Source: Macrostomum lignano (lineage: Eukaryota). From it: a stretch of DNA of 64,000 nucleotides. This document shows positions 18,301 through 61,968 of the stretch, piece after piece. Each line of letters opens with the position of its first letter. The first letter of the stretch is position 1. Location: NCBI GenBank assembly GCA_002269645.1, contig NIVC01000301.1:418460-482459 (forward strand), given 5' to 3'. The position numbers and the translations under genes are program-made. The notes under the pieces were generated by a model. That model was not told the DNA's origin. It saw only the letters and a program-made list of their open reading frames with translations, and made no database searches.

Positions 18301-18875
18301 CTCTCAGATTGGGATTCCTGCATCAGCTCCACCCTCAGATTGGGATTCCTGCCTCAGCTTCTCCCTCAGATTGGGATGCCTGCATCAGCTACTACTGCCA
18401 GTAAGCAGACACCTGAACCCTGCTCCCCCCCCCCTCCATCAGCGGGCAGGTGCGAAGCGCCATCGACACCGAGCTGAACAAGGAGCTGCAGAGCTACCAC
18501 AACGACTCGCTGCTGAAGTCTGAGGTCGACTTCATCCAGTCCACCTACCAGTGCTGCGGCGTGAACAACTTTACCGACTGGCTGGAGACGCCGTGGTCCC
18601 GGCAGCACAACCTGACGGTGCCGGACTCCTGCTGCCGCGACCACCGCTGCAACGACACGGACCCGACTGTTGATAGCCAAGTGTTCCACAGCGGCTGCCT
18701 GAGCAAGCTCAACTACGACTTCTCTCGATTCCTGGGCCTCATCGCCGCTTTCTCCTTGGTGGTGGCCATCCTGCAGGCCCTCGGTCTGCTGGCCTCCTGC
18801 GTGCTCATGTGCCGGGAGCGGCGCAGCCCGACCTACCAGCGCTTCGGCGAGCAGGAGGGCGGCCGGCACGTGTGA
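9375..18875 (+). CDS. Tetraspanin (TSPAN3-like), 3 coding exons, ~252 aa
   Basis: Exons 9375-9440 (MANDFTKIFSKCILSIIFISLW|gtaagt), 12843-13102 (TM1 end to TM3, GCFACINENRCLL) and 18443-18875 (EC2 with YQCCG, PDSCC and GCL, then TM4, TGA). All introns are GT-AG with consistent phases; total 759 nt. Confidence 0.88.
13118..15240. repeat. 30-bp minisatellite (ACTGTCAGCAACCCTTTCACTGACACTTCT variants), ~70 units, in tetraspanin intron 2
   Basis: Directly visible tandem array with 29-bp and 30-bp variant units. Confidence 0.97.
15760..18395. repeat. 31-bp minisatellite (GCTCCTCCCTCAGATTGGGATTCCTGCCCCA, with 36-bp variants), ~80 units, in tetraspanin intron 2
   Basis: Directly visible tandem array. 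The unit has no stop codon in any plus frame, which explains the three 800-900 aa ORFs. Confidence 0.97.
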
Positions 18876-22855: not shown

Positions 22856-32920
<10,065 letters not shown>

Positions 32921-35072: not shown

Positions 35073-38050
35073 GGCTTCAGCGCCGCCACCGAGGAAGCCT
35101 TCCGCAACCTCCCTAAGTCCCGCCTGTCGGTTCACAAACGCATCCTTCGCTTCAATCAGATCATCCTGGAGCAGGCGCACAAACACATAGGCAAAATCCG
35201 GCTTAAGAGACAATCCAAGCCCTGGCTTACCCAAGAAGCTAAAGCTGCCATCAAGCGCCGCAACCGCCTCCGGCACGAAGTGCATCATAGGCGTCAAGAG
35301 TGGCTCGACGCTTGCATCGAAGCTTCCCGGCTCACCCGCGACGCCAAAGACTCTGCCTGGAAGGAATACCTCGCCGACCTGCACCACAGCCATGATTCGA
35401 GCCAGGCGTGGAAACTGATCAGGTCCCTCAGCGGCTCCCCGGGCTCCTCCGCGCCCAACGAGGCTCTGCTCGTGGGTGAACGCTCTCTCACTGACAACCG
35501 CAGCAAAGCCAACGCCTTCGCCAGCCACTATGCTTCTGTCTGTCGCCTCAAGATCGACAGTGACGACCGGGCGGTCGTCAGGCGCGCCAAAGCCATTCTG
35601 CGGAGCAACGCGCCGGCTACCGCGGAGACCCCACCCATCACCATGGAGGAGCTTCGCGGAGCGATTGCTCATCAGAAGACTAACGGCGCCGCCGGCCCGG
35701 ACGACATTTCCCCGCGCATGTTGCAACACCTGGGGGACGCAGCCCTCTTAGAGTTGCTGTTTATCTTCAACATGTCGCTGCACACCGGATCCCTGGGCCA
35801 CATCTGGCGTTGCGCCATTATCATCCCGCTTCTTAAAGCCGGCAAGTCGGCCAGAGAGATCTCCAGTTTCCGCCCAGTGAGCCTCACCTCCTGTGCCGTT
35901 AAACTTCTGGAGCGAATCATCGACACCAGACTGAGACACCTCGCCAACTCTTGTGGCTGGATCTCGCCGGCCCAGGCTGGCTTCCGTGCGATGTACTCGT
36001 GCGAGGACCTGTTACTCAGAGTTGTGCAGGACATTAGCGACGGCTTCCAACTCAAACCGGCCGAAAGGACCATTCTCGCCCTCCTGGACTACTCTAAGGC
36101 GTTCGACAAAGTGTGGCGCGAGAAGCTTATCACCATCCTCGCTGATAAAGGTGTCCCGCTTGCTTACATTCGCTGGATTTCGTCCTTCCTCAGCGACCGC
36201 CGCGCTCGGGTTTCCTTCAACGGGTCCCTCAGCAAGTCCAAGCCGATGCGCCAAGGCCTTCCGCAGGGATCCGTCTTGGGACCGCTGCTATTTACGCTTT
36301 TCATTGACCCTGTCGTCTCCGTTATCCCTGAGGATGTTGGCATCACGTTATACGCTGACGACATCTCTCTCAGATGCAGGCACCGCAACAAGCTCACGGC
36401 CGCCTCCCGCCTTCAGGCCGCCCTCAACGCTGTTACCGCCTGGAGCTCCTTCAACAAGATGGTGCTCAACGCTGACAAGAGTGAAATCGCCTTCTTTTCT
36501 ACCGACCCCAGCGAAGCGAGCTGGAGCCCCTCGCTCTTCATCGGGCATTCCCAAGTTCGGCACTGCAGCACTCCTAGACTCCTAGGCATTACCCTGGACC
36601 GTACGCTCAGCTTTAACGCGCACGTCAACGACATCTGCAGCAGAGTCCTGTTCCGCTGCCGCATGCTGTCCTGCCTCGCGGCTCGGGACTGGGGTTGGCG
36701 CAAGGAGCGCCTTCGCGGCGTCTACCTGGCTATGCAGCAGAGCCTTCTTAACTACGCGGCCCCGGCTTGGCAACCTTGGCTTTCCAGCACCTCCTTCGAG
36801 CGCCTTGAGCGCGCGCAAAACCAGGCCCTCAGAATCGTCACGGGCTTGCACCGCTCGGCGCCGCTTGACGCTGTGCACCTGGAGGCCGGCATCGGCAGCT
36901 ACAGGAACACCAGCGACCGCCTTTGCCTCATCGCCAGGGAACGCGCGCTCAGGCTGCCCAACGACCATCCTCGCGCCATCGCCCTCTCGGGCACCGTGCA
37001 ACACCGGCTCGCCCGCAGTAGCTGGAGACTCCGCTCGGCTCAGCTTGCCAATGGCCTTGGCATTGATCTCACGCCGCGTCTGCCGCTCACACCGGCCTTC
37101 CCATGCCCCTGGCTGGACCAATATCTTCCGGCGATCCTAGCTGACAATCCTTTGCCTCCGGCCACCACGCCCCCGTTGGAGCGCTGTCTTGCCGCTCTCG
37201 ACGTCATTCGGTCTCACCCGGCTGAGCTCGTCATTTACTGCGATGGTTCGGCGGCCGGCGGCTCCGAGGCTGGCGGGGCGGCCGCTGTGGTCACCATCGG
37301 AGACCCGGCAGTCCCGACGACCGTGGAAGCCCGCACGTCCGCTGGCAGCCGCTACACCAGCTCCTTTGAAGAGGAACTCCGCGCTCTGGTCCTAGCCCTC
37401 GACTACCTCCGCTCGCACCCACGCGCCCTGCCATCATCTGCTCTGACAGTCAGTCTCTTCTGCGCGCCCTTCAGCGTCCCTTCAGCCGCCTGGCCTCTTC
37501 CCTCCGCTTCCCGCACAACTGCCGCGCTCTCCTGTGGGTCCCGGGTCATGTCGGCATTCCGGGCAATGAACTCGCGGACCGCGCTGCTAACTCCGCTGCC
37601 GCCAACGCCGATGAAGCACCGCGCCCCAGCATCAGTTTTCCCACTGCCGCCTCGGTGATCCGCCGCACTCTGGTTGACAAGCCGGTCACCCACGCGAGAT
37701 CTCGTCTCACCTATGCCTCCGCCGACGCCGAAAAGAAACGTCGGCTTATTACTAACCGCAAAGACGCTGTCCTTCTTGCCCGGCTGCGCTCCGGCCACTC
37801 CAGCCTCTTCGGAGCCTTCCGCGCCCTCATGGACCCCACGGTGGATCCGACGTGCCAAAGGTGCTTCCTCGAACCAGACACCCTTGAGCACTGGACAGCG
37901 TGCCCTGCTCTCGAGGCCGCCCGCCGTCGCTTCATTGGAGCTCCGCTCTCCCTCAGCAACTTGTCCGATTACCCTGATGGTTTGGTCGCGCTGGCCAGGT
38001 TCTGCATGGATCCTGGGCGCGTTTGGGCCAACTAACAACAACAACAACAA
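35073..38050 (+). mobile_element. 5'-truncated non-LTR retrotransposon (RT + RNase H + CCHC finger), I-group/Ingi-like, nearly intact
   Basis: RT motifs GAAGPDDI, FRPVSLTSCAVKLLE, LLDYSKAFDKV, GLPQGSVLGP and YADD. RNase H motifs IYCDGS, CSDSQS and WVPGHVGIPGNELAD. Zinc finger CQRC...EHWTAC. One apparent 1-nt frameshift at ~37430. (AAC)n tail at 38036-38050. 14-bp TSD CAGCAGCATCACAG at 35059-35072 and 38051-38064. Confidence 0.92.
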
Positions 38051-38551: not shown

Positions 38552-40626
38552 TCAGGCGGACAAGTTCTTGTACACTTTGAAGCAGTGGTTGCCAGTGTCA
38601 ACAACTACCAGCTGATTGAATTCGGGCAGATATGCGACACCCTGCGGACCGTACAGCTGGTCCGCGTGGGTGCTCACGCTGGAGAGGAACCGGCCTTCGC
38701 TGTTGAATATCTGCGGGTTCGTTGCGGTCAGCATGGAAATTCTTCAGCAGAATCAATCAATTTGTTTGATATATTCAACCAACGTCAGCCAGAAGTGAAC
38801 TAAATATTTTTGCATCTTCAACCAGCAGAGTCTACTGGAAGTGGGATCGGGATTAGCGTTCTCACCTGAAGCGACGAGCTACCCCAGTCAGCCACGATGA
38901 TGTTGTCCCTGGTGTCTACCGCCACCCCGGTAGGCGCGTTGAAGCGTCCGGCCTCCCGGCCGGTGCAGCCGATGACGAACAGGAAGGCGCCCTGGCTGTC
39001 GAACACCTTCACGCAGTGGTTGTGAAAGTCGGTCACCACCAGCTCGTCCCGAGACGTGGTGGCGATGTAGTGCGGCCCTGCGAACTGGTGCTCGGCCACG
39101 CCGCGGCTGCCGAACCGGCGCTCCACCTTGCCGAGCGGCGTGAACAGCAGCACGCAGCAGGCGCGGTTGTCCACCACGGCCACCCGACCGTCCGACAGAA
39201 CCGTCAAGCCCTTCGGCCCGGCCAGCCGGTTGGCGCCGAAACGCTTCTTGTAGCGGCCCTCGGCGCTGAAGACGTGGACGCAGCGGCCGTCGTAGTCGCT
39301 GACGAGAATGTCGCCGGTCTCCGCGGACTCGGCCACGTCCACCGGCCGCTGCAGATGGCCGGGCTCACGACCGCGGATGCCGAACCGGCTGATGAAATCG
39401 CCGCCGGGGCCGAATGACTGCACGTTGGCGTTGTTGGCGTCCACCACCAGGATGCGCCCGGTGCGGCCCGAGACGCGGGCGCCCTGCGGGTTGCTGAACT
39501 CGCCGTGGCCGCGGCCGCGGGCGCCGACCCGCAGGACGAGGTCGTCGGGCTCGTGGTTGCCAAATGCGGCCGCCGAGGCGGCGGCTCGCCGGCTGACTCC
39601 TGTCCGGCTGACGGAGCGGCGGAGGGAAGCGGCGACGCCTCCACCGCTGCTGGCGCTGGTTAGCGAGCGCGTGGAGCCCCGAACGGCGCCGATGCTGCGG
39701 CTGGTGGCCGGCATGCGGCTCGAGCTGGCAGGCCGGGTGGGCCTAGCGGGCCGCCTGTGGACGCCGTCGCTGACGCCGCCGCCGCCGCTGCCGTTCTCTG
39801 GCGCCACGGCGTGCACGGCGAACGGGGATCCGCGAATGTGCTCGCCGAGCAGCTTGACGTTGAGGTCGTAGACCCCCGGCCGGTCCAACTGGAATTTCAC
39901 CCGCAGCTGGTCGTCCTCCTGCTGAACGGCCACCGAGTAGGAGTTCTCGAATGGCGAGCTGATGCTGGCGGCGCAGCTGACGCTGGCGAGGGCGGCCGGA
40001 TCAACCGGCCGGTTCTGCGAGTCTCGGGCCAGCACGGTGGCGACGCACTCGGTGGCCACAGGGCAGGCGCGCAGAAGATCGCCGCCGGCCTCCTGCAGGC
40101 GGCAGTTGGCTGCCTGGACTCCGCCAAGGACCACCAGGCCGACCAGGTGCAGCCGGCTGAGCAGCTGGTCCAGCTCGGCCGGGAAGAAGGACAACGAGTC
40201 CGACTCGCTCGGGTGGACGGAGGGCCGCTCGGCAGCCAGCTGGGCTGCGGCCGCTTCGATCTCGGCGGAGTCGGCTGGTTGATCCTCCAGCAGCTGCAGC
40301 AGGGCGGCGGCCGCGGCGTCGGCGGCTTCGGCGCGAGCCTCCTCGGCCTGCATGGCCTCGGAGCGGGCGGCGGCCAGCTCGTTGAGTGACTCGGCCAGCC
40401 GGGCCTTGCGGTTGCGCAGGAATCGCTCCACCATCTGGAAGCTGCGCTCCATCTGGTCGAGAACTTCGCGGCGTTCGGCTGGCTCGCGCTCACGAATCCG
40501 CGCCAGCTCGGCGCGCCGCTCCGACCAGGCCTGGCGCGACTCAGCGGCCACTCGGCGCCACTCGTCGGTTGCAGCGGCGGCCGCTGGCGCCGGGGCCTCG
40601 TCGTCGCCTCCTTCGTCGCCGCTCAT
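38552..40626 (-). CDS. TRIM2/TRIM3-like protein: coiled coil, filamin domain and six NHL repeats, ~639 aa, no RING or B-box visible
   Basis: Exons 40626-38866 and 38710-38552, with a GT-AG intron. Filamin motif GVYDLNVKLLGEHIRGSPF. NHL motifs DDLVLRVGARGRGHGEFSNPQG, RFGIRGREPGHLQRP, HQFAGPHYIA, FNAPTGVAVDTRDNIIVADWG and LYGPQG...DTGNHCFKVY closely parallel the TRIM2/3 C-terminus. Confidence 0.9.
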
Positions 40627-42846
40627 GGCCGCTGGCTGACGAGTTTTTCGGGGTGGTGGTGGGGGGGAGGGCAATTAGCTGCAGCAATTTTTTTCGGGAG
40701 TTTCTTCAGCTGCCGGTTACTCGGCTTTCGCAGCCCTCAGCTAAATTCCTGCCGCCACTTGCCAGTGCGGAGCGGAAGACGGGGGGCAGAGAGCTGCGGC
40801 TGTGCAAACTGCGGCCAAGCAGGCCAGGCGGTTGCGAGGCCGCTCGGAGTTCGCGGGGTGCCGAGTTGGCCACAAGCTGGAGCGCCCAGCAACGGTACAG
40901 CAACCGGCCGCCCCCCCCCCCTCCTACCCAACTCAGCACCACCTGCCCTGCCGAATACGAGGGCTCATTTCTAGATCGGCTGCAATCGAGCATGAAAGAA
41001 AAATGTGTGTGCAGAAATATTCTGGCCAGGCATTGGATTGCTGGGTTCAGCTGCATGGGAACTGCTCGCTTGGGGTTGCCGCCTGCCGTCTGGCTGTGGC
41101 TGGCAAAGTTTGGCTCAGCTGCAGACACAGGATGCGCAGACGAATGAGTCACAGCTCTGCTTTGGCGCGGTAGAAACTTCTACTAAGTAGAAATAAAGAA
41201 ACTGTGTTTTTCAGTTTCAGTACACTGTCCTAAAGGCTTCCACACGCCACCATCAAATGAGGCATCAAATCACACGTCTGACGTACAAAGCTACACGACA
41301 TGTGGCTTTGATAGCCTGTGTGAGTGACCGAGTCAAAAGTGCCGCAAGCAGGAGGTCCTCGGACTTTTTGGCGGACGCGATGGGAATAGTCATCAACCCT
41401 GTTTGTCCATTGGAGCGTTTGAAACTAAAACACACTAGTGATACACTAGACTCGGCAATGCTTACCTGCAGTTGCTTCAAAGGTCAGACAAGTAGAATTA
41501 TGGAATTACTGAAAGTCCGCTCAGACCTATAGCTGAAGTGCTTGGGTAAGGCGCTCAGACTGCATGGGTTTGAGGTGGACAAAAACTGGTTGACGCCCTC
41601 TCAGACGGAGAAGTTCTGTCCTTCTGCCAATTCCGTGCAGCCCTGCAGTGCTCCGAGTGTTTGAAGTTTTGCGTGAGCCTCGTTTTATAGCTGGCAGACG
41701 GAGCACTTCTGCCTTGGTCTGGCCGGGGCTGTACGGCCCCTGCGCAGAGAGAGCCCAGTGCTCTGGCCCGGACTGCAGGGGAAGGGAAAGGGAGGCGAGC
41801 GGAAGGGGAAGGAGATTTCAGTACAGCGGGAGACTCAAAATTCCCTGGCGCCCCTCTGCCCCCCAGCGCGATATCGATAGTGTTAAATCCCTAAGGCTGC
41901 AGCGATTGCCTCAGCTCAGCCAACCCCCCCCCACCCAGCCGGCCTCAGTGAATTAATTTTCTTTGCGTGTCGCCCTGGTTGGTCGCCCTGCGCGTGGCCT
42001 GTCGGCTCAAAAATAGTAGGCGGCGGCGGCAGTCCAGGGCAGAGTCTGCAGCAGCGGGGTCTCCTCATGTCCGGCGTACTTAGCATGCAGAGCACCCGGA
42101 CTGGTGGAGCCGGTCAGGGCACACAAAAAGGCCACCTGTGAGATTAATACGACCTGTCAGGCCCCTCCTGTCAATAAGAAACTTGATATGACTTGAGCGT
42201 CTGTGTACAGCTGTCGAGCTGTGTCGCTGTCGCTGAAGTGTCGCTGGGTGAGACAGGACCTGTACATTCGTATAAAATTCCTAAGGTGTCAGACAGGGGT
42301 GTAGAGTGTACCAGGCAGCCATTGAGAGATACATGTACCGGAGAAAGTCATCATGCTTACAGGTGCATCAATCCGAAATGAATAAAAATGATCGACTTGT
42401 CTAGGAATATTAGCAATCGGTTCCTAACCAAACCTAGTCCCACTTGAAATTGCCTAGGGGGCCCCTAGGGGCTACACTAGTGGCTAGCTAGGGGCTACCT
42501 AGGGGGTTGTCAATAGATTCCTTAGGGGTACCCTAGGGGCCATTAGAGGCCAGCCTGCTAATAACTTTAATATGTACTCGTAGTTGCTGGCCCTTAATGG
42601 CCCCTCAATATAAAACTGTTTACAATTTTGATATGCATGCACTCTGGACTTCTCGTGGGCCCTTTGGGCTTGCAATTAAGAAATCTTGCAAGATATTGCT
42701 AGATCTTGGACGATAAATCAATGATCTAAGAATCTTGGAAGAATTATCGAAGACCATTTGAATAGTCGACTTACTTCTTGAATTAATTCAGAAACTGAGG
42801 CATAGCGCATGCAGGATGAGTAGTTTAATTAGTGGTGAATCACACC

Positions 42847-44639: not shown

Positions 44640-46518
44640 GGCGAAATCCAAAAACGTGGGATAAAACGGTAAAACAAATCTGCGGACATTCGATGGAAAG
44701 TAATGTATCTAAAAAAGGTTTTTGAAAGATAGATATGTCTTTAGAAAATAGTTCTGGATAAAAACTATTGTTTTCATGCTTTGTATTGTTGAATAAATAA
44801 GAAAAAACCACAAAAAAGCATTTTAAAAGTCCGAGTTGACCGATTTGCAATTTTTTGTTTCACTTTTTTTCATTATTAAACAATTAATTTTAAGACTTGT
44901 AGGCCTTAGAGAAGGCTAATTTTTTTACTAATTACAAAAAAGAAAGTAATCTGTGTTTTACTTTTTATTCAATTCAAAAAGATGAAGTATTTCTAAGGAT
45001 TTCAAAGTTTTTCTAAAACCATATAAACTCGCAAAAATTCATACTAATATAAAGTGCAAAGTTTGCCAGCAAACATCTTTTTCTAAAAGTAAATATATCG
45101 CTAATTCCTTGTTGCAAAATAATCTTTAAGTTGTTTTCTTTCATTTAAATATCAACTTATTTGTAATAGTATTTGTAATATGCCTATATTTAGACTTAAA
45201 AATTTTGGGTAAAAAATGGTACCACAAGATGTGAACCCGGCATCCAAATCAGATGCTTACTGTATGCTCATTAAGCGACGAAGAACAATGAAATTACACT
45301 AAAACATGTATCATCGCGGCGTGTATGCAGGAAAAAAAGAATTTTCCAAATCGCTTCAGTAGAAGCTGAGTAAAATGCAATTTTCCAATCCTTATGGGAA
45401 TTCCAATGTGTTACCCGGCTTCCAAATCAGATGCTTACTGTATGCTTATTAAGCGACGAAGAACAATGAAATTACACTAAGACATGTATCATCGCGGCGT
45501 GTATGCAGGAAAAAAAGAATTTTCCAAATCGCTTCAGTAGAAGCTGAGTAAAATGCAATTTTCCAATCCTTATGGGAATTCCAATGTGTTACCCGGCTTC
45601 CAAATCAGATGCTTACTGTATGCTTATTAAGCGACGAAGAACAATGAAATTACACTAAAACATGTATCATCGCGGCGTGTATGCAGGAAAAAAGAATTTT
45701 CCAAATCACTTCAGTAGAAGCTGAGTAAAATGCAATTTTCCAATCCTTATGGGAATTCCAATGTGTTACCCGGCTTCCAAATCAGATGCTTACTGTATGC
45801 TTATTAAGCGACGAAGAACAATGAAATTACACTAAAACATGTATCATCGCGGCGTGTATGCAGGAAAAAAAGAATTTTCCAAATCACTTCAGTAGAAGCT
45901 GAGTAAAATGCAATTTTCCAATCCTTATGGGAATTCCAATGTGTTACCCGGCTTCCAAATCAGATGCTTACTGTATGCTTATTAAGCGACGAAGAACAAT
46001 GAAATTACACTAAAACATGTATCATCGCGGCGTGTATGCAGGAAAAAAAGAATTTTCCAAATCGCTTTAGTAGAAGCTGAGTAAAATGCAATTTTCCGAT
46101 CCTTACGGGAATTTGTATGTTTAAATAATAAACTTACGTTGAATACAATTTATTGCAAACGAACTCTACAAAATACACGTTGTCAAGAGTAACGAAAGTG
46201 ATAAACAAATAAAACCTTAAAATAATGTTAAATATGTTGTAGAATTATAAAGTGTAACATTATAAGATAGTTAAAGTTAATAAAATACATTATTATAGCT
46301 TTTTAATCATTTTCATTAGACTCATTTTAGGTCGTAATTAAACTTACCGTTTTAACAAATCATTTTATTAAAAATAAAGCTATACGAAAATAATTTGTGC
46401 TTTAATAGACTTTTTTACTTTTTAAAAACATGAATAAATTTATTTTATAGCTTTATTGCTTTCAAATTGCCAAAAAACGAATTTTCATAAAACTTGCCCC
46501 CGATTTTTGGATTTCCCC
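44640..46518. mobile_element. Non-autonomous DNA transposon, Kolobok-like
   Basis: Imperfect terminal inverted repeats: left GGCGAAATCCAAAAACGTGGG, right CCCCGATTTTTGGATTTCCCC. 4-bp direct repeat TTAT at 44636-44639 and 46519-46522. The 5'-RR...YY-3' termini with a TTAA-like TSD fit Kolobok rather than piggyBac. No coding capacity seen. Confidence 0.6.
45236..46112. repeat. 178-bp tandem repeat, ~4.9 near-identical units
   Basis: The CCGG marker of each unit recurs at 45237, 45415, 45593, 45770 and 45948. Confidence 0.97.
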
Positions 46519-49731: not shown

Positions 49732-50088
49732 ATGTCTCTTAGCGTTCGTACCTTGAAGGTGTTTTCCAACCGCCTGCTTTATCGAAAGCAGATGATCGTT
49801 AGCGTCACCCACGGCGGCTCCGGCAAAAACGTCAGCAAGAGTGACGTCAAGACTAAGCTGGCTGAGAAGTTCCGCACCACGCCGGATCTCGTGGTCTGCT
49901 ACGGCTTCAGGACCAGCCTTGGCGGCGGCCAGTCCCGCGGATACGCGCTGGTGTACGACAGCCCCGACTACATGAAGAAGTTCCACCTGGTCAAGCGAGT
50001 CCGCGACGCGAGCCGGAAGCAGCGCAAGGAGCGCAAGAACAAGAAGAAGAGGCAGGGTCATAAGAAGGAGAAGAAGAAGGCCAAGTAG
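49732..50088 (+). CDS. RPS24: 40S ribosomal protein S24 (eS24), intronless and divergent
   Basis: NRLLYRKQM, KLAEKFRTTPDLV, GFRTSLGGGQSRGYALVYDS and SRKQRKERKN are eS24 signatures. 118 aa, single ORF. Confidence 0.9.
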   Translation: MSLSVRTLKVFSNRLLYRKQMIVSVTHGGSGKNVSKSDVKTKLAEKFRTTPDLVVCYGFRTSLGGGQSRGYALVYDSPDYMKKFHLVKRVRDASRKQRKERKNKKKRQGHKKEKKKAK

Positions 50089-52198: not shown

Positions 52199-53840
52199 AT
52201 GCCGTTGCGCCAGTTCAGCGCCGACGAAGTCGACGACTTCTACCTGGCCGCTGGGCGCGGTGACATCGACGCGATGCTTCGCCAGCTGGACACTGGCCTG
52301 GACGTCGACAGCGCTACGAGTCGGGAATTTCATCGCACCGCCTTGATGGCGGCCGCCATGACCGATCAGGCTGAGGCCGCCCGGCTACTCATGTCGCGGG
52401 GCGCAGCGCTGGATGTGCGCGACCGCGAGCTCGGCTGCACAGCGGCTCTGCTGGCGGCCCAACAGCAAAGCCGCGGCGTCCTCCGCTTGCTCACCGAGGC
52501 CGGAGCCCGACTCAACGCCTTCAATTCGGCGGGCTACTCGGCCTTGTTCTGGTGCATCGAGAACAACGACGAAGCTTCAGTGGCTCTTCTGCTAGAGGCC
52601 GGCGCCGATCCGAGCCGTCGAAACCCGAACGGTCTGGCGCCGCTGCACCTGTGCGCCGCCTTTGACCGAGTGGACATTGCCCATCGCCTGCTGGAGGCCG
52701 GAGCCGAGCCAGATCCGGTAAGCTGCGAGTTGCACGGAAGACACACGCCGCTGACGCTGGCGGTCTCAGCTGGCGGCCGGCCGCAGATGCTGGAGATGCT
52801 GGCATCCAGCGGTGCCGACCTGGAACACGCGTCCGAGGAGGGCACTGCGATGGCCCTGGCCAGGGGCCGCCCAAAGCTGCTCACCTGTCTCGAGTCACTG
52901 ATGCGAAGGTTTGAAGAAAATCTAGCTGAATTAGGCAGCTTTTTCGCTGGGTCTGGTTTTCCAAAATGTGAACATTTGGAATCGTGATTTCTCAAACTTA
53001 CATTTTAGTCGTCGAGCGTCCGAAAGGAGACGCTCCAGCACTGTAAATGCAGCCGCGGTAGCCAAGCAGGCATCAGCGGCGCGTCGACAGACAGCCCGGC
53101 GCGCTGCAGCGACAACGCCCCGCAGGCCGCGCTCTGCGCTACCCTCCGGAATTTACCCGTGTGCGGCGCGGCCCCGCGGCACTTGCCTGCTGGCCGGGTG
53201 CGCTCGGTTCTCGCACGAGTTCGATTTTCCCGCCATGCCGGGAAGCGAGGAGCGGCTCGCGCTGCTCACGGACACGTTTAGCGACCTTGGCCTGCTCATC
53301 AGGCCCGCAGTTGGGCTCGCCGGCGGCGACCTGCTCGCGAGAGCGCAGCGCCTTGCTGCCGCGGACCACTCGGCTGCCGACTTGCTTGTCTGCGCCTTTG
53401 TCGGCTACGGCCTCAGCGGCGGCATGGTTGGTTTCGACGGTAGGCCGACCGACATCGGCCAGCTGGTCGACTGCTTCTCGCCAGCTGAATGTCCAAGCCT
53501 GGCCGGCAAGCCGAAGCTCTTTCTCTTCCTGCTGTCTGCGGCCCCGCGCGCTCGCGGCCCAGGCCCGACCTTTCCGGAGCCCAGCCAGGCCGACTGCTTG
53601 CTGGCTTACGCCTGCGTTGCTGACGCCAGCAGCTGCGGCCGCCTCACCGACTTTCTGCACCGAATGCGACGGGCCTTGGACACCGAGGCCGAGCACGTCG
53701 ATTTCGGCCGGCTGTTCCTTGGCGCCAGCGAGCGGCTTCTTGCCGCGTCTGCCTCGACGGATGAGAAGAGCGGCTTCTCCCAGCCGGCGCTGCTGACGGA
53801 GGTGCGGCACAGCCTGGACAGACAGCTGCTCTTCCGTTAG
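52199..53840 (+). CDS. Ankyrin-repeat protein fused to a catalytically inactive caspase (peptidase C14-like) domain, 2 exons, ~513 aa
   Basis: Exon 52199-52908 has ~6 ankyrin repeats (RTALMAAA, GCTAALLAA, GYSALFWC, GLAPLHLCA, HTPLTLAV). A 100-nt GT-AG intron (52909-53008) joins in phase to exon 53009-53840, which carries PRGTCLL, DHSAADLLVCAFVGYG and CPSLAGKPKLF. Total 1542 nt. Confidence 0.85.
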
Positions 53841-54160
53841 CTGTAGCGGTGCCGGATGTTTACTAAAAATAGAATGAGCTACTAAATATCACAGGTGGCC
53901 TGACTGGACCTACTCTATATGTCTAGATTCTATAAATTTCCCCAAAAAGAACACCGTTTTGTGTTTAAAGTCTCAACTAAAATTTAAAATCAAAATGCTT
54001 TGTCTTTCCGCATGAGGTTTTTTCCACGAGAGTTTTCCCCGCCGAGGTTTTCCCGCAGGGTTTCCCCAGTCGGAATTTCAAGTCAAATATAGTCTATAGA
54101 CATTGCTAGACTAGATTAGATTTCAAATCGAAAACTTCCTGCGGGAAATTCTCATAGACC

Positions 54161-54330
54161 GAGTAAGCCTAGTGGTTAGAGTGGCGGACTCACGACTAAA
54201 AGGTCCTGGGTTCGATTCTCTCGACCCAATCGGAACAATTTGTCCTTGGGCAAGACACCCAACTCTACATTGCTTTAGTTCACCCAGCTATAAAATTGGT
54301 ACCAGCATTAGCTGGGGTATTGGGGGTGAA
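54161..54330 (+). mobile_element. tRNA-derived CORE-like SINE (copy B, 3'-truncated)
   Basis: AGCCTAGTGGTTAGAG...GGGTTCGATTC...GTCCTTGGGCAAGACACCCAACTC...TTTAGTTCACCCAGCTATAAAATTGG. Confidence 0.82.
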
Positions 54331-55543: not shown

Positions 55544-57653
55544 TCAGTACACTCCGAGGCATTGTGTGTTTAGGCTTACAAAGAAAATAACAAATGGCAC
55601 GACCATCATTGCGACTCCGAAGATGACGAACACTTTGAAGAACACCCGATCAGCGGAAGATCCGACAGTCTTCCATTCGTTTCCCCCAAAACTGACGTTG
55701 GAAGCCTGCGACACCGATACTTCGCCATCCGCATCGGCTGTGGTGCATGTGACTGTCCGCTTAGAACTTTCTCCGACAACGAATCTGTTGAGGAAGAGTG
55801 CACGGACGACCCGACTGCTGACGCTGCTCTCTTGCCTGAAGTGACAGCTGAGAACGAATGCGTTGCAGAGCACATTTACAATTGTCATGATCACGGCCAA
55901 GCTGAAGTACCAGGCTGGAATGTGAGGCAAGTGTCAAATTCAGATAGACTGCTCACGCAATGGAAGCAATCGAGTGACTCACTGATAAACGGCACGGACT
56001 CGCTCTGCGTGGGCGTGTAGTTGCCAACCAGCTGCAGGAACACGCACATGGACAGCACGATGGTGATGCTGAAGGAGACTCGCTCGCCACACTCGGGAGG
56101 CAGGCAAAAGGCGAGCGCGGAGACTCCAAGGAGAAGGATGCAGGGCAGCATCAGGTTTATCATGTAGAAAGTCGGAAGTCGCTGCAATTACAAATCCTGA
56201 TCTACATGTAGAACTCCAAGTCTCAGAAACACTATCTCAAGAAATTTTATCAAGATCTGAACCAAAACTCACTTGAAATCCGACCCGGAGCTCGGCTGTG
56301 TCGTACAGGCCAAACGACCCGTTTTCTAACCGGACCCACAGAATGCAGAACTCGCTGCTCTTGATGACGTACCCCGACGGTGAATCATTCTCATTCAGAG
56401 ACTTGATGCGGACTCGAGTCGATCCCGTGGCTTGCTGCAGACTCGAGAGCCTGACAAGACAATTTTGCTCATCGAACGGAAACAGCTGCATTTGCATGCT
56501 GCACTTGGTGGACAGAATCATTCCTGTGCTCCACAGCACAATGCCTGAAGACATCACCATTAGAACTGCGTTGTCCTTCGTAGCATCCGAGAGCTCCACC
56601 CTAAAGTGAATTGTTTAAATGAAGGCACTGCGACCTAGCTTTTGGCAGTCCTTGCCATCTTTTTTTTCATACCCAGACAGTATGCTATGTTAGAATATCA
56701 TCCTACTCTATAATTAAATTTAAGGTATATGCTTAAACGACTCACACATCGTAAAAAGAAGCGTCAGGTTGCCACAGGTACGAAGCCGGAAGGCTGATTG
56801 CGCTGATGTTGTCCAGACTGGAGTTGAACTTTCCTTTCCAGGCCAGGCGACTGTCGTTCCAATGCTGCAATTAGATCGCATGTCAATCGTATATAGCTCG
56901 TACTAGGACGTAGATTGTCCTAATGTCAGATGTGCAACCGACAGCTCAGCCGCAGCTATTGCGCGGCGCCTCTGAAGGCTGCGTACGGCTGTTCAGTCCA
57001 AGGACTGGAGGGTCGCCACACACACCCTAAATTACCCCTAATAATACTGGCGCCCATTTTACATCTGGATAAACTGAAACAATAGAGAGTTAGGTGTCTT
57101 GCTCAAGGACACAAATTGTTCCGAGTGGATCGAGAATCGAACCCCCGACCTTTCAGTCGTCGGTCCGACGCTGTCACCAGTAGGCTAAACCCCTCCACTA
57201 GGCTACAACCCCCTAGATCGAACAGTTTAATATAAAAGCGCAACAGGCATAGTAGGGAAACTTACGCGGAAATTTTTGCGAGTTTTTACAAGTACAAACT
57301 CACCAAATTAAGCCACACCTTGAGTTGTATCTCCTGATTTGCGGAATCCTAAAACGAATTCGGAACAATTTTCGGATCCTAGAAATGGTTGTTCAAAAAC
57401 ATTAAATAGACTTAAGCAGCCCTCTAAGGCGCAGCATTCAAGCACAACTCACCACTTTAACGATGGAGTTCAGATAGATGAAGACATTGAGGGTGTTGGC
57501 AAATCCGCTGTCAGGTGGCGGTCGGATCGCTTTGTTATACTCGGTGAAGAGCTTCAGCGCTGCCGCGACGGCATCGTCTGGTGAGGCGGGCGATGCGGCC
57601 GCTGACACAGCAGCACCGAGCAAGGCCAGGCAGATGAGGAGTCGCGCTGACAT
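55544..57653 (-). CDS. Cys-loop ligand-gated ion channel, nAChR-like non-alpha subunit (copy 1), 6 exons, ~420 aa
   Basis: Exons 57653-57453 (signal peptide), 57348-57304 (45-nt exon DSANQEIQLKVWLNL), 56864-56746 (HWNDSRLAW...WQPD), 56600-56273 (Cys loop CSMQMQLFPFDEQNC), 56181-55983 (M1-M2, CGERVSFSITIVLS) and 55914-55544 (M3-M4). Total 1263 nt, phases consistent. No vicinal loop-C cysteines. Confidence 0.92.
56915..57213 (-). mobile_element. tRNA-derived CORE-like SINE (copy C) in intron 2 of channel copy 1
   Basis: Reverse-complement homolog of copies A and D, with a short duplicated 5' head (CTAGGCTACAACCCCC-like sequence twice). Confidence 0.85.
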
Positions 57654-59257: not shown

Positions 59258-59819
59258 GTTGTAGCCTCGTTTTGCTTGACTACTAAGAGTAATATGAATG
59301 AACATGTACTACCTATGGTTTCCGGCCTTCCAATGCTAACAGATCTCTTATAACCCACACTCACAGAGTCGCCCGGTGTAGGCTCACAGCTTTGTTGTTG
59401 TCTGAAGCTGACTTGATTGACAGCTTGATGGAGGACATGGCTTAATGGCCGCCTGCCTGACAGAGTATTCTAAGCAAGCAATTAGGATTCAAACGAGAAA
59501 TGTGAAAGAAATTATAGCTTTAATTAATTATTCAGGCAAAAAAGCAGCTTAAAGTAATTAATTCTGGGTTTAATAGGTTTCCTATTATATCCGGATACTG
59601 GTTATCGAGTTTGAGGCCTCCCTTTTCCTAAGGATAGGATCTGCCGACCGATTCCGATACCCATAGAGGATTATTGATTGATTTTTTTACCCTAGAGTAA
59701 CCGATAGGAGCACACGACTCCGATTCCGTTATTTCTAGAAGAAGACGCCCTTTCTGGAGGACATCGTTATTGCTATAGAGTTGACTTTGTTATTAGGCGC
59801 ATCTTTGATACTGATTTCA

Positions 59820-60108
59820 GCACTCGATGAACATTTTGATTGCTGCACTCGAGGAACATTTTGATTGCTGCACTCGAGGAACATTTTAATTGCTGCACTC
59901 GAGGAACATTTTGATTGCTGCACTCGAGGAACATTTTGATTGCTGCACTCGAGGAACATTTTGATTGCTGCACTCGAGGAACATTTTGATTGCTGCACAC
60001 GAGGAACATTTTGATTGCTGCACACGAGGAACATTTTGATTGCTGCACTCGAGGAACATTTTGATTGCTGCACTCGAGGAACATTTTAATTGCTGCACTC
60101 GAGGAATA
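59820..60108. repeat. 25-bp minisatellite (GCACTCGAGGAACATTTTGATTGCT), ~11 units
   Basis: Directly visible. Confidence 0.96.
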
Positions 60109-60400
60109 CTTCGACGTCGACTGATTAAATTGTTGCGCTCTCACTTTCGGCCGATTTTGGAATCCAAGCAGACTACTCCGGAGGAAGACGTGTTGAAGAA
60201 ACGAGCTCGGAGAACCTGCCCGACAAAGAAGAGGAGCCAGCACCAGTAAGTGATCAATGAATTTTGTTCGCAGGCTTGAGGTCTGGAAGTGGGAGTTTTC
60301 GGGTGACTGATCACCACCCGATCAAACTCTTTAACAATGGGACTAACAACCCTGTATGATTATAATTGAATTTATTGGATTGAATTATAGATTAAACTTC

Positions 60401-61968
60401 TGTGGAATCAGTGAGTGGGGCGGCAGGGCCTCGTATATTTATTTTCGTAAATTTATTAGGGTGGTTAGTTGGGTGCTGATACGAAAAGAGGGTTGGAGTA
60501 CGCGACTGAGGAAGAGGTAAGATTAATGGGCCAATCAGAAGACGGCGAAGGGAAGAGATAAGAATGACAAGGGTGAATCAGAAGGCCGCGAAGGGAAGAG
60601 ATAAGAATGACAACGGTGAATCAGAAGGCCGCGAAGGGAAGAGATAAGAATGACAAGGGTGAATCAGAAGGCCGCGAAGGGACGAGATAAGAATGACAAC
60701 GGTGAATCAGAAGGCCGCGAAGGGACGAGATAAGAATGACAAGGGTGAATCAGAAGGCCGCGAAGGGACGAGATAAGAATGACAAGGGTGAATCAGAAGG
60801 CCGCGAAGGGAAGAGATAAGAATGACAACGGTGAATCAGAAGGCCGCGAAGGGAAGAGATAAGAATGACAAGGGTGAATCAGAAGGCCGCGAAGGGACGA
60901 GATAAGAATGACAAGGGTGAATCAGAAGGCCGCGAAGGGAAGAGATAAGAATGACAAGGGTGAATCAGAAGGCCGCGAAGGGAAGAGATAAGAATGACAA
61001 GGGTGAATCAGAAGGCCGCGAAGGGACGAGATAAGAATGACAAGAGTGAATCAGAAGGCCGCGAAGGGACGAGATAAGAATGAAAAGGGTGAATCAGAAG
61101 GCCGCGAAGGGAAGAGATAAGAATGACAACGGTGAATCAGAAGGCCGCGAAGGGAAGAGATAAGAATGACAAGGGTGAATCAGAAGGCCGCGAAGGGAAG
61201 AGATAAGAATGACAAGGGTGAATCAGAAGGCCGCGAAGGGAAGAGATAAGAATGACAAGGGTGAATCAGAAGGCCGCGAAGGGACGAGATAAGAATGACA
61301 AGGGTGAATCAGAAGGCCGCGAAGGGAAGAGATAAGAATGACAAGGGTGAATCAGAAGGCCGCGAAGGGACGAGATAAGAATGACAAGGGTGAATCAGAA
61401 GGCCGCGAAGGGACGAGATAAGAATGACAAGGGTGAATCAGAAGGCCGCGAAGGGACGAGATAAGAATGACAACGGTCAATCAGAAGGCCGCGAAGGGAA
61501 GAGATAAGAATGACAAGGGTGAATCAGAAGGCCGCGAAGGGAAGAGATAAGAATGACAACGGTGAATCAGAAGGCCGCGAAGGGAAGAGATAAGAATGAC
61601 AAGGGTGAATCAGAAGGCCGCGAAGGGACGAGATAAGAATGACAACGGTGAATCAGAAGGCCGCGAAGGGAAGAGATAAGAATGACAAGGGTGAATCAGA
61701 AGGCCGCGAAGGGAAGAGATAAGAATGACAAGGGTGAACTACAAAACAGAGTAAACAGGCAGATATCTGAAGAATAGATTAACAAATTTGCGACACAGGT
61801 GCTCGTAGCTAATGGCGTCACTTAAGCAGTGTGGTAGACAAGGTTCGAGAACAATAGGAAGTAAGTAAAACAAGAGCTATGGGACAATGAGGGAACAATA
61901 AATTGCGGAAGATGAGGAAATAAATTCGGGTGTTTGGGTTAGTGATCACGGGATTTGGGCGTGCGACA
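60401..61968 (-). mobile_element. Putative solo LTR inflated by an internal 43-bp array
   Basis: The minus strand starts TGTCGCA and ends TTCCACA, with AATAAA ~35 nt before the end. Flanks CTTC and CTGC match at 3 of 4 positions. No gag/pol sequence nearby. Confidence 0.4.
60531..61738. repeat. 43-bp minisatellite (GAATCAGAAGGCCGCGAAGGGAAGAGATAAGAATGACAAGGGT), ~28 units
   Basis: Directly visible purine-rich tandem array. Confidence 0.97.

What the first reader, a model, noticed from the sequence alone, without database searches (positions are those of the whole stretch)
52199..53840. Ankyrin-repeat / pseudocaspase fusion: a cFLIP-like decoy with ankyrins in place of death-fold domains
Seen: a clean in-phase 100-nt intron joins ~6 ankyrin repeats, through a basic R/A/S-rich linker, to a complete caspase-fold domain. 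Established: caspase-8 has PRGYCLI, DHS..DCFICCILSHG and CPSLAGKPKVFFIQACQG. Here these read PRGTCLL, DHSAADLLVCAFVGYG and CPSLAGKPKLFLFLLSAA, so the catalytic His is replaced by Tyr and the catalytic Cys by Ser, and the inter-subunit linker is very short. Initiator caspases and cFLIP normally carry DED or CARD prodomains, not ankyrins. The ORF has no lesions, which argues for a maintained gene. Inference: a catalytically dead caspase partner that uses ankyrin repeats to recruit or sense targets, possibly an undescribed regulator of apoptosis or innate immunity. I cannot confirm novelty without a database search.
Basis: partly seen in the sequence, partly recalled or inferred. Interest (0 to 1): 0.75.

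Follow-up and report, generated by a model that had tools for sequence, protein, structure and literature searches.

The report
Dead ankyrin-caspase gene in a flatworm
A free-living flatworm (Macrostomum lignano) carries an expressed, conserved gene that joins ankyrin repeats to a complete caspase fold with no working active site. It is probably a cFLIP-style regulator of the flatworm "ankyrin caspases", a family described in 2024; no catalytically dead member of it has been reported in the papers I could search.

Summary
Window 52199-53840 (+) is a two-exon gene with a 100-nt GT..AG intron at 52909-53008. It encodes 513 aa: six ankyrin repeats plus a C-terminal cap, an Ala/Arg/Ser linker, and a full caspase fold.

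- **Fold evidence:** Pfam Peptidase_C14 5e-15. The AlphaFold caspase domain is mostly above pLDDT 90. Foldseek TM reaches 0.91 against caspases.
- **Active site:** catalytic His is Tyr370, catalytic Cys is Ser413, S1 Arg is Met313 and Gln is Leu411. The inter-subunit loop is 15 aa and has no Asp.
- **Identity:** the product is exactly GenBank PAA85922.1 (Macrostomum lignano Mlig024756g2, "hypothetical protein"). That gene model was built from transcripts.
- **Selection:** a second copy (g1) differs at 3 nonsynonymous and 6 synonymous sites (p=0.013).

Ankyrin-prodomain "ANK caspases" were already described in flatworms (GBE 2024). M. lignano also has apparently active ones (Mlig019067) and a kinase-pseudocaspase-ANK-caspase protein.

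This gene is therefore best read as a lineage-specific dead paralogue of that family, acting like cFLIP-L or CSP-3. Descent from ANK caspases is suggested but not resolved, and the function is untested. I rate it a new variant of a known kind, of moderate interest.

The parts
52199..52908 (+). Exon 1 (ATG at 52199-52201), aa 1-236 plus two bases of codon 237
   Evidence: The product is identical to GenBank PAA85922.1.
52232..52906 (+). Ankyrin-repeat domain: six repeats (aa 12-44, 45-79, 80-112, 113-145, 146-180, 181-215) and a C-terminal capping half-repeat (aa 216-236)
   Evidence: Pfam Ank_2 5e-30 and Ank 1e-21. Repeat boundaries were read from the sequence. The AF2 model is helical here, with pLDDT 50-88.
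52909..53008 (+). Intron: 100 nt, GT..AG, phase 2, 36% GC
   Evidence: One substitution separates the two gene copies here.
53009..53840 (+). Exon 2: linker plus the entire caspase-like domain, with stop TAG at 53838-53840
53010..53141 (+). Basic Ala/Arg/Ser-rich linker (aa 238-281) with RRAS, RRRS and RRQT motifs
   Evidence: Composition, motifs. AF2 predicts one long helix over aa 225-273 at pLDDT 63-68.
53142..53549 (+). p20-like half of the caspase fold (aa 282-417)
   Evidence: Pfam PF00656 5e-15, PDB caspase-6/-8 at 1e-13, 118 bits against a caspase HMM
53235..53237 (+). Met313 (ATG) at the position of the S1-pocket Arg (caspase-1 Arg179)
   Evidence: Alignment column table and alignment A1
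53406..53408 (+). Tyr370 (TAC) at the position of the catalytic His (SHG becomes GYG)
53529..53537 (+). Leu411-Leu412-Ser413 at the position of Gln-Ala-Cys (QACxG becomes LLSAA). The Ser413 codon TCT is at 53535-53537
   Evidence: Gap-free register with KPKLFFIQACRG. In the AF2 model it sits at the end of strand beta4.
53550..53594 (+). Very short inter-subunit (L2) loop, aa 418-432, with no Asp before D432
   Evidence: Asp positions. Paralogues and caspase-8 have about 40 aa here.
53595..53837 (+). p10-like half (aa 433-513): beta5, alpha4, alpha5, beta6
   Evidence: The sequence match is weak (9.7 bits, i-E 8e-4). The AF2 pLDDT is about 80-95, and Foldseek alignments of about 230 columns cover it.
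53799..53816 (+). EVRHSL motif in strand beta6, the caspase dimer-interface strand
   Evidence: It matches PEV[RK][HE]TL of M. lignano, Schistosoma, Trichobilharzia and Sparganum ANK-clade caspases. Beta6 is aa 498-504 in the model.

Best explanation
This is a real, transcribed, two-exon gene of Macrostomum lignano (Mlig024756g2, PAA85922.1). It encodes ankyrin repeats, a basic helical linker and a complete but dead caspase fold.

It is most likely a lineage-specific, catalytically inactive paralogue of the flatworm ankyrin-prodomain (ANK) caspases. I propose it works as a non-cleaving partner of active caspases. The retained caspase fold and its beta6 dimer strand would let it pair with an active ANK caspase such as Mlig019067. 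The ankyrin repeats would bind a recruiting partner or platform. In this way it would tune initiator-caspase activation, as cFLIP-L does for caspase-8 and CSP-2/CSP-3 do for CED-3 (the CSP comparison is from my own knowledge). Damping seems more likely than activating, because its inter-subunit loop is too short and Asp-free to be processed.

**Shown here:** the gene model, the fold, the loss of the dyad and the S1 pocket, the uncleavable loop, two intact copies with nonsynonymous changes rarer than synonymous ones, and active ANK caspases in the same genome.

**Inferred:** descent from ANK caspases, heterodimerisation, and the direction of the effect.
For: - **Gene and transcript:** the spliced product is identical to PAA85922.1. 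Mlig_3_7 GenBank models come only from RNA-seq-based transcript assemblies.
- **Fold:** PF00656 5e-15. The AF2 caspase domain is mostly above pLDDT 90 with canonical strand and helix order. Foldseek matches caspase-6/-7/-3/-9/-8 at E about 1e-14, TMt up to 0.91.
- **Dead site:** R179 is Met, His is Tyr, Gln is Leu and Cys is Ser. L2 is 15 aa with no Asp.
- **Constraint:** g1 against g2 shows 0.61% substitutions in the gene and 2.09% in the flanks (p=9e-6). Nonsynonymous changes are 3/1131 and synonymous 6/408 (p=0.013).
- **Family context:**
  - M. lignano encodes ANK + intact C14 proteins (P0104, four copies) and a Pkinase-pseudocaspase-ANK-caspase protein (P0207).
  - The closest single sequence to the p20 half is an ANK caspase, P0117 (36% over 129 aa).
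  - After long-branch taxa were removed, 93% of NJ bootstrap replicates place the gene next to P0117 or the P0207 pseudocaspase domain.
  - The beta6 motif EVRHSL is shared with ANK-clade caspases.
  - P0207 has the same layout as this gene: a phase-2 intron right after the ANK domain, then linker plus the whole caspase domain in one last exon.
- **Precedent:** the pseudocaspase cFLIP-L heterodimerises with caspase-8 (PMC11121540). ANK domains can bind active caspases, as in Caiap (PMC5662874).
Against: - No interaction, expression-level or phenotype data exist.
- Phylogenetic placement is not resolved:
  - In the first NJ tree the gene joined long-branch crustacean domains at 49%.
  - Group HMMs score ANK 74.2, DED 73.1, effector 72.2 and CARD 60.1 bits, which does not discriminate.
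  - The 50% pairing with the P0207 N-terminal domain may be long-branch attraction.
- The ANK domain resembles the P0104 ANK domain only generically (35% over 102 aa). It scores higher against unrelated ANK proteins, some of them bacterial. A shared docking platform is therefore doubtful.
- Intron positions are not shared with P0104.
- No orthologue was seen outside M. lignano, so long-term conservation is unproven.
- The composition is strongly skewed: Ala, Leu, Arg and Gly make up 49% of residues and GC3 is 77%.
Confidence: 0.5

Rival explanations
1. Neofunctionalised scaffold. The dead caspase fold and the ankyrin repeats are both used simply as protein-binding modules in a pathway unrelated to caspase control, for example signalling or cytoskeletal anchoring, possibly regulated by phosphorylation of the basic linker.
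For: - The ANK domain is not specifically similar to that of the active ANK caspases.
- The linker carries three RRxS/T basophilic-kinase motifs.
- A related M. lignano protein fuses a kinase to pseudocaspase-ANK-caspase modules.
- The S1 pocket is destroyed, so the protein cannot even trap substrates.
Against: - The part of the degenerate p10 half that best keeps a family motif is the dimer strand beta6.
- The known pseudocaspases that I could check (cFLIP, and caspase-12 as proposed) act on caspases.
Confidence: 0.25
2. Young relic. This is a recently inactivated duplicate of an ANK caspase that is drifting. It is still transcribed and open only because it is young and GC-rich, and it has no function.
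For: - No orthologue beyond M. lignano was found.
- The p10 half is almost unrecognisable by sequence (9.7 bits).
- Composition is skewed.
- Long ORFs also occur in other frames of this GC-rich stretch, for example 53139-53810 (-) at 223 aa. An open frame is therefore weak evidence here.
Against: - Nonsynonymous changes are about five-fold rarer than synonymous ones between the two copies (p=0.013, small counts).
- The domain is about 28-36% identical to its nearest relatives, so it is old rather than young. Even so, AF2 folds all of it with high confidence.
- Both copies keep the start, the splice sites and the stop.
Confidence: 0.17
3. Still an enzyme. The protein hydrolyses some substrate using Ser413 or other residues in place of the Cys-His dyad.
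For: Ser occupies the nucleophile position.
Against: - The general base His is Tyr.
- The Gln of the QACxG motif is Leu, and the P1-binding Arg is Met.
- I know of no precedent in clan CD (own knowledge).
Confidence: 0.03
4. Annotation or assembly artefact. The two exons would belong to separate genes or be a mis-joined chimera.
For: The authors of the lophotrochozoan caspase survey caution that unusual prodomains can be prediction chimeras.
Against: - The same 513-aa model exists at two separate loci with conserved synteny: RPS24e lies 2.1-2.5 kb upstream at both.
- The models come from transcript assemblies.
- The intron has canonical GT..AG ends and restores the reading frame exactly.
- Pfam finds ANK and C14 together in five further proteins: P0104 and P0207 (M. 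lignano), P0193 (S. japonicum), P0117 (organism unknown) and P0068 (the jellyfish Sanderia).
Confidence: 0.03

Closest known systems
[quoted passage not shown]
   Same: - N-terminal ankyrin repeats, a long linker and a C-terminal caspase domain, in a flatworm.
- Caspase-8-like p20 motifs (PRGxC, DHS, CPSLAGKPKLF).
- The C-terminal EV[RK]H[TS]L beta6 motif.
   Different: - The catalytic His and Cys and the S1 residues are all replaced, whereas ANK caspases keep SHG and QACRG.
- The L2 loop is 15 aa against about 40.
- The host is free-living, whereas the paper calls the clade restricted to parasitic flatworms.
- Clade membership is not resolved here.
- This gene has a single intron, against four in the M. 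lignano ANK caspase gene.
cFLIP-L (CFLAR), the vertebrate pseudocaspase partner of caspase-8
   Same: - Full caspase fold with both catalytic residues substituted.
- Carries the same class of prodomain as the active enzymes of its family.
- The logic of a dead paralogue that could pair with the live one.
   Different: - Its prodomain is ankyrin repeats, not tandem DEDs.
- Its origin appears independent. No cFLIP chain is among the 60 best PDB sequence matches or the 50 best fold matches.
- The linker has no Asp, so it cannot be cleaved there.
- Heterodimerisation is not shown.
C. elegans CSP-2 and CSP-3 (inactive caspase homologues that restrain CED-3 autoactivation; own knowledge)
   Same: An invertebrate, lineage-specific, catalytically inactive caspase homologue that could act as an inhibitor by binding the zymogen.
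   Different: As I recall it, CSP-3 is only small-subunit-like and neither protein has ankyrin repeats. This protein has the whole fold plus a large recruitment domain. I ran no comparison here.
Tandem pseudocaspase/caspase proteins: M. lignano Mlig030125 (Pkinase-pseudocaspase-ANK-caspase) and the crustacean and amphioxus multi-caspase proteins found here
   Same: - The P0207 N-terminal domain is also dead (IIGCG, QTHRD). It lacks the S1 Arg, has a short L2 and a degenerate p10.
- It is sister to the window gene in 50% of bootstrap replicates.
- The ANK-to-caspase exon layout and the intron phase are the same.
   Different: In those proteins the dead and live domains sit in one polypeptide. 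Here the dead domain is a separate gene with its own ANK domain. Identity to the P0207 N-terminal domain is only 28%.
Caiap (CARD + 16 ANK inflammasome adaptor of fish; PMC5662874)
   Same: It shows that ankyrin repeats can bind and stabilise an active caspase. This is a possible role for the ANK domain here.
   Different: Caiap has no caspase-like domain and has a CARD in its place. It is a vertebrate protein. No homology is implied beyond ANK repeats.

Membership tests
Caspase fold (MEROPS C14A / Pfam PF00656) | Significant match to the Peptidase_C14 profile | tested here: met
   56.2 bits against a cut-off of 21.4, E 5e-15. PDB caspases match at 1e-13.
Caspase fold (MEROPS C14A / Pfam PF00656) | Complete p20+p10 alpha/beta fold (six-stranded sheet, five helices) | tested here: met
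   AF2 gives beta1-alpha1-beta2-alpha2-beta3-beta4-L2-beta5-alpha4-alpha5-beta6 at mostly above pLDDT 90. Foldseek TMt is 0.85-0.91 over about 230 columns. This is a prediction, not an experiment.
Active caspases (C14A peptidases) | Catalytic His (SHG) and Cys (QACxG) | tested here: not met
   The motifs read GYG and LLSAA, so His is Tyr370 and Cys is Ser413.
Active caspases (C14A peptidases) | Asp-specific S1 pocket (Arg179, Gln283, Arg341 in caspase-1 numbering) | tested here: not met
   Arg179 is Met313 and Gln283 is Leu411. The Arg341 column holds Gly447 with Arg448 next to it, so that position is ambiguous.
Active caspases (C14A peptidases) | Inter-subunit linker with Asp processing site(s) | tested here: not met
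   The loop is 15 aa and there is no Asp between D391 and D432.
Platyhelminth ANK caspases | N-terminal ankyrin pro-domain followed by a caspase domain, in a platyhelminth | tested here: met
   Domains from Pfam. The organism is M. lignano.
Platyhelminth ANK caspases | Caspase domain falls inside the ANK-caspase clade | tested here: inconclusive
   - The nearest single sequence is an ANK caspase, P0117.
- 93% of replicates place the gene next to P0117 or the P0207 N-terminal domain.
- Monophyly of the window gene with the ANK clade is recovered in only 16% of replicates.
- Group-HMM scores are tied.
- The first tree was dominated by long-branch attraction.
- NJ was the only tree method available.
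Platyhelminth ANK caspases | Presumed active initiator (intact dyad), as in all members seen here | tested here: not met
   P0104, P0117 and P0234 keep SHG or AHG and QACRG, and the window gene does not. The other members (P0193, P0212, P0078) were not in that column table.
cFLIP (CFLAR) | Tandem death effector domains | tested here: not met
   There is no DED hit, only ANK families.
cFLIP (CFLAR) | Caspase-like domain with both catalytic residues replaced | tested here: met
   For the definition of cFLIP-L as a pseudocaspase.
cFLIP (CFLAR) | Heterodimerises with the active paralogue and modulates it | not testable with these tools
   No multimer modelling or experiment was available.
Ankyrin-repeat proteins | Tandem 33-aa ANK repeats above profile thresholds | tested here: met
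   Ank_2 at 104 bits and Ank at 76 bits. Six repeats plus a cap.

The most novel reading that the evidence does not exclude
Flatworms may have evolved their own cFLIP independently. On this reading the gene is a stand-alone pseudocaspase that carries the family's ankyrin recruitment domain, heterodimerises with active ANK caspases and sets the threshold for an ankyrin-based death or immune pathway. According to PMC11463336, platyhelminths have lost FADD and the parasitic ones have lost DED caspases, so such a pathway would stand in for the DED/FADD system.

Taken together with the active ANK caspase Mlig019067, this would also move the origin of ANK caspases to before the split of Macrostomorpha from the other rhabditophoran flatworms, and so before parasitism. 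That contradicts the published "parasite-restricted" picture.
Probability: 0.35. Interest if true: 0.65.

Novelty: new variant of a known kind. Interest (0 to 1): 0.48.

Why it matters
- **Convergent regulation.** Regulated cell death in flatworms is only sketched. By the one survey of these genes, all platyhelminths lack FADD and the parasitic ones lack DED caspases. The ANK caspases proposed to take their place have no known activator, regulator or function. A dead ANK-caspase paralogue would be the first candidate regulator of that pathway. It would also be an example of the "dead paralogue controls live enzyme" solution arising a second time, independently of vertebrate cFLIP.
- **A tractable model.** The gene sits in M. 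lignano, where RNAi, transgenesis and regeneration assays exist. The idea can therefore be tested there rather than in parasites.
- **A correction to the literature.** M. lignano carries plain ANK caspases, which qualifies the published claim that the clade is restricted to parasitic flatworms.

Tried and rejected
- **Word-index search with the caspase domain alone:** it returned nothing, not even the protein itself. I replaced it with the exhaustive HMMER search.
- **Profile search with four flatworm caspase domains:** generic caspase-8 and caspase-3 hits swamped it. It added only one Schistosoma sequence.
- **First NJ tree:** the gene joined long-branch crustacean multi-caspase domains at 49% support. 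I treated this as long-branch attraction and repeated the tree without them.
- **Group-HMM classification:** ANK, DED and effector models scored 74, 73 and 72 bits, so it was uninformative.
- **Shared introns with the active ANK caspase gene P0104:** none are shared.
- **Specific ANK-domain similarity to P0104:** only generic repeat similarity was found.
- **HGT or contamination:** I considered this because the best ANK hits include bacterial proteins. I rejected it for three reasons:
  - the gene has a spliceosomal intron;
  - it lies next to RPS24e at two syntenic M. lignano loci;
  - its caspase domain is of the animal type.
- **Literature look-ups:**
  - The gene name "Mlig024756" appears in no paper.
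  - The supplement of PMC11463336 is not held. I therefore could not see which M. lignano accessions the authors used.
- **Look-up of the spliced protein as letters:** I solved it through the exact cluster look-up and P0346.
- **Rfam scan of 49-56 kb:** it found nothing.
Full report
**What is in the sequence**

Window 52199-53840 (+) holds two GC-rich blocks (67-68% GC) separated by a 100-nt AT-rich stretch (36% GC) that begins GT and ends AG. Exon 1 (52199-52908) starts at an ATG and, if read on unspliced, stops at 52987. Joining 52908 to 53009 splits a Ser codon after its second base (phase 2). This restores the frame of the downstream ORF and gives a 1542-nt CDS of 513 aa that ends at TAG 53838-53840.

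**Identity of the locus**

The spliced product is letter for letter GenBank PAA85922.1, "hypothetical protein BOX15_Mlig024756g2" of Macrostomum lignano, on contig NIVC01000301.1 of assembly GCA_002269645.1. A second copy, g1 (PAA68041.1, UniRef name "Caspase family p20 domain-containing protein"), lies on NIVC01001427.1. Both copies have an intronless RPS24e gene 2.1-2.5 kb upstream on the same strand; in the window it is at 49732-50088. The GenBank annotation of this assembly was made solely from a genome-guided RNA-seq transcriptome, the StringTie/TACO/TBONE "coregenes" set (PMC5730564). The two exons therefore come from one assembled transcript. This is indirect support for the junction. 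I could not inspect reads.

**Domains and fold**

- Pfam finds ankyrin families (Ank_2 5e-30) over aa 1-236 and Peptidase_C14 (5e-15, 56 bits against a cut-off of 21) over aa 293-445.
- By eye there are six repeats and a C-terminal capping half-repeat.
- The 45-aa linker is 29% Ala, 27% Arg and 13% Ser, and carries RRAS, RRRS and RRQT motifs.
- By sequence the p20 half matches caspase-6 and caspase-8 large subunits at about 1e-13. The p10 half is barely detectable (9.7 bits).
- An AlphaFold2 model, built on g1 with a 121-row alignment, has mean pLDDT 79.9. The caspase domain is mostly above 90 and has the canonical order beta1-alpha1-beta2-alpha2-beta3-beta4-loop-beta5-alpha4-alpha5-beta6.
- Foldseek aligns about 230 columns to caspase-6, -7, -3, -9 and -8 chains at E about 1e-14, with target TM-scores of 0.85-0.91.

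**Active site**

In gap-free register with KPKxFFIQACxG and CCILSHG of 30-odd caspases, the protein reads KPKLFLFLLSAA and CAFVGYG.

| Canonical residue | Residue here | Codon |
|---|---|---|
| Catalytic His | Tyr370 | TAC, 53406-53408 |
| Catalytic Cys | Ser413 | TCT, 53535-53537 |
| Gln of QACxG | Leu411 | |
| S1-pocket Arg179 | Met313 | ATG, 53235-53237 |
| S1-pocket Arg341 | Gly447, with Arg448 next to it (ambiguous) | |

The inter-subunit loop is 15 aa (418-432), against about 40 in paralogues and caspase-8. There is no Asp between D391 and D432, so there is no processing site. The protein can neither cleave after Asp nor be matured in the usual way.

**Is it maintained?**

The two copies differ at 10 of 1642 positions (0.61%), against 2.09% substitutions in 7.4 kb of aligned flank (Fisher p=9e-6). 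Within the CDS there are 3 nonsynonymous changes in 1131 sites and 6 synonymous changes in 408 sites (p=0.013, ratio about 0.2). The counts are small, but the direction is that of purifying selection. An open frame alone would be weak evidence here, because long ORFs also occur in other frames of this GC-rich stretch.

**What is already known**

[quoted passage not shown] It reports them as a maximally supported platyhelminth clade sister to DED caspases, first noticed in Schistosoma, and states that they are restricted to parasitic flatworms. [quoted passage not shown] That is the only paper in the library using the term. None mentions Mlig024756. The architecture is therefore not new, but no function is known and no dead member is described.

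**What the same genome holds**

An exhaustive HMMER search of 1.84 billion cluster representatives with the caspase domain found only the gene's own cluster below 1e-30. The next hit is at 28% identity and 4e-19. With, this means no orthologue was visible outside M. lignano. Among the weaker hits:

- **P0104** (Mlig019067, four copies, 599 aa) has ANK repeats plus a full Peptidase_C14 domain with SHG and QACRG intact.
- **P0207** (Mlig030125, 1072 aa) reads Pkinase, then a dead caspase domain (IIGCG, QTHRD, short loop, degenerate p10), then ANK, then an active caspase domain.
- **Parasitic flatworms:** P0193 (Schistosoma japonicum) carries ANK plus C14. P0212 (Trichobilharzia), P0234 (S. turkestanicum) and P0078 (Sparganum) are its close caspase-domain relatives, in which Pfam detects only C14.
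- **P0117** (an unidentified organism, run SRR23782937) also carries ANK plus C14.
- **P0068** (the jellyfish Sanderia) has an ANK-caspase-ANK-caspase protein.

P0104 groups with the Neodermata sequences in the NJ tree and scores best against their HMM. M. lignano thus has a small radiation of ANK-linked caspase and pseudocaspase modules, and the window gene is its stand-alone dead member.

**Descent**

This is the weak point.

- *For descent from the ANK family:*
  - The closest single sequence to the p20 half is the ANK caspase P0117 (36% over 129 aa).
  - After long-branch crustacean and amphioxus domains were removed, 93% of NJ bootstrap replicates put the gene next to P0117 (43%) or the P0207 dead domain (50%).
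  - The beta6 motif EVRHSL matches PEV[RK][HE]TL of ANK-clade caspases.
  - Like the ANK-caspase module of P0207, the gene has a phase-2 intron directly after the last ankyrin helix and then encodes the linker plus the entire caspase domain in one final exon.
- *Against, or neutral:*
  - The first tree was dominated by long-branch attraction.
  - Group HMMs for ANK, DED and effector caspases tie at 72-74 bits.
  - The ANK domain is only generically similar to that of P0104.
  - None of P0104's four introns is shared.

I put descent from the flatworm ANK-caspase radiation at roughly two in three. The alternative is an independent ANK-caspase fusion. Such fusions appear to have arisen elsewhere, in an annelid according to the paper and in the jellyfish found here.

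**Mechanism**

The shown facts are a complete caspase fold that cannot bind or cut substrate and cannot be processed, a large ankyrin module, constraint on the protein, and live ANK caspases in the same cells' genome.

The best-supported model is that of a pseudoenzyme partner. Caspases are activated by dimerisation across beta6 (own knowledge). cFLIP-L, a dead caspase-8 paralogue with the same prodomain type as caspase-8, heterodimerises with it and changes its output (PMC11121540). C. elegans CSP-2 and CSP-3 are a further precedent (own knowledge). Here the p10 half is degenerate except that the dimer strand keeps the family motif. This fits retention of a dimer face, but it is an inference.

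Because the L2 loop is short and Asp-free, the protein could not contribute a cleaved L2' segment to a partner's active-site loop bundle. I therefore lean towards a damping rather than an activating role; that too is an inference. The ankyrin domain may dock to a platform or directly to a caspase, as Caiap's ANK domain does (PMC5662874). Its lack of specific similarity to the P0104 ANK domain argues against simple competition for one platform.

The rivals are a scaffold unrelated to caspases (0.25), a drifting relic (0.17), residual enzymatic activity (0.03) and an annotation chimera (0.03).

**Verdict**

The gene is a new variant (catalytically dead, stand-alone, in a free-living species) of a known kind (flatworm ANK caspases, and pseudocaspases in general). 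Interest is moderate. The gene is testable in a tractable model. Together with Mlig019067 it also qualifies the published view that ANK caspases are parasite-specific.

Noticed in passing
L002 3001-6919 (NIVC01000010.1); proteins P0104, P0230-P0232: M. lignano, a free-living flatworm, has an apparently active ANK caspase (Mlig019067, four copies; ANK + full Peptidase_C14 with SHG and QACRG). It groups with Schistosoma, Trichobilharzia and Sparganum sequences. The 2024 survey states that ANK caspases are restricted to parasitic platyhelminths.
   Followed up: partly
L005 1001-6370 (NIVC01000166.1), protein P0207; neighbouring gene at L005 1-362 (-): The published "kinase pro-domain caspase" of M. 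lignano actually reads Pkinase, then a dead caspase domain (aa 315-529, IIGCG/QTHRD), then ANK, then an active caspase. The neighbouring gene, on the opposite strand just upstream, also encodes Pkinase + Peptidase_C14.
   Followed up: partly
window 53010-53141: The linker carries three basophilic-kinase consensus sites (RRAS at aa 238, RRRS at 243, RRQT at 262). AlphaFold models it as one long helix. Phosphoregulation or a nuclear-localisation role is possible.
   Followed up: no
window 49732-50088 (+): An intronless RPS24e gene (118 aa) lies 2.1 kb upstream on the same strand and is syntenic at both gene copies. Polycistronic, trans-spliced units exist in this species, so co-transcription is conceivable.
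   Followed up: partly
window 13118-18390, 24018-24831, 26028-26410, 45235-46113, 59812-61738 and others: The window is dense in minisatellites. Examples are a 30-bp unit repeated 71 times, a 31-bp unit 83 times, a 43-bp unit 28 times and a 178-bp unit 5 times. Several create long spurious ORFs, for example 15726-18523.
   Followed up: no
window 35280-37655 (+) and 7265-8275 (-): These ORFs contain reverse transcriptase (RVT_1) domains and are probably non-LTR retrotransposon copies. The second is a fragment.
   Followed up: no
window 38821-40674 (-): A GC-rich 618-aa ORF (71% GC) has a Filamin repeat and NHL repeats. It is probably an exon of a TRIM-NHL-type gene.
   Followed up: no
window 23498-23570 (+), 54160-54240 (+), about 57132-57152 (-): There is a tRNA-Val(CAC) gene, plus two tRNA-like stretches that share its T-arm box and that ARAGORN does not call as tRNAs. 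They are probably tRNA-derived SINE copies. One lies 320 bp downstream of the gene's stop codon.
   Followed up: partly
proteins P0067, P0069 (Panulirus, Penaeus), P0066 (amphioxus), P0068 (Sanderia): The best outside hits to the dead domain are multi-caspase-domain proteins. In the crustacean ones an active first domain is followed by a dead second domain (FYGDG/NTCYY). The jellyfish protein repeats ANK-caspase twice. Dead caspase domains paired with live ones seem to recur across invertebrates.
   Followed up: partly
L003 2106-3755 (Logan SRR23782937): The closest relative of the window's p20 half is an ANK caspase from an unidentified organism. It has a GC-rich CDS in AT-rich flanks and encodes ANK, linker and p20 in one exon. 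Identifying the sample could reveal another free-living flatworm with ANK caspases.
   Followed up: partly
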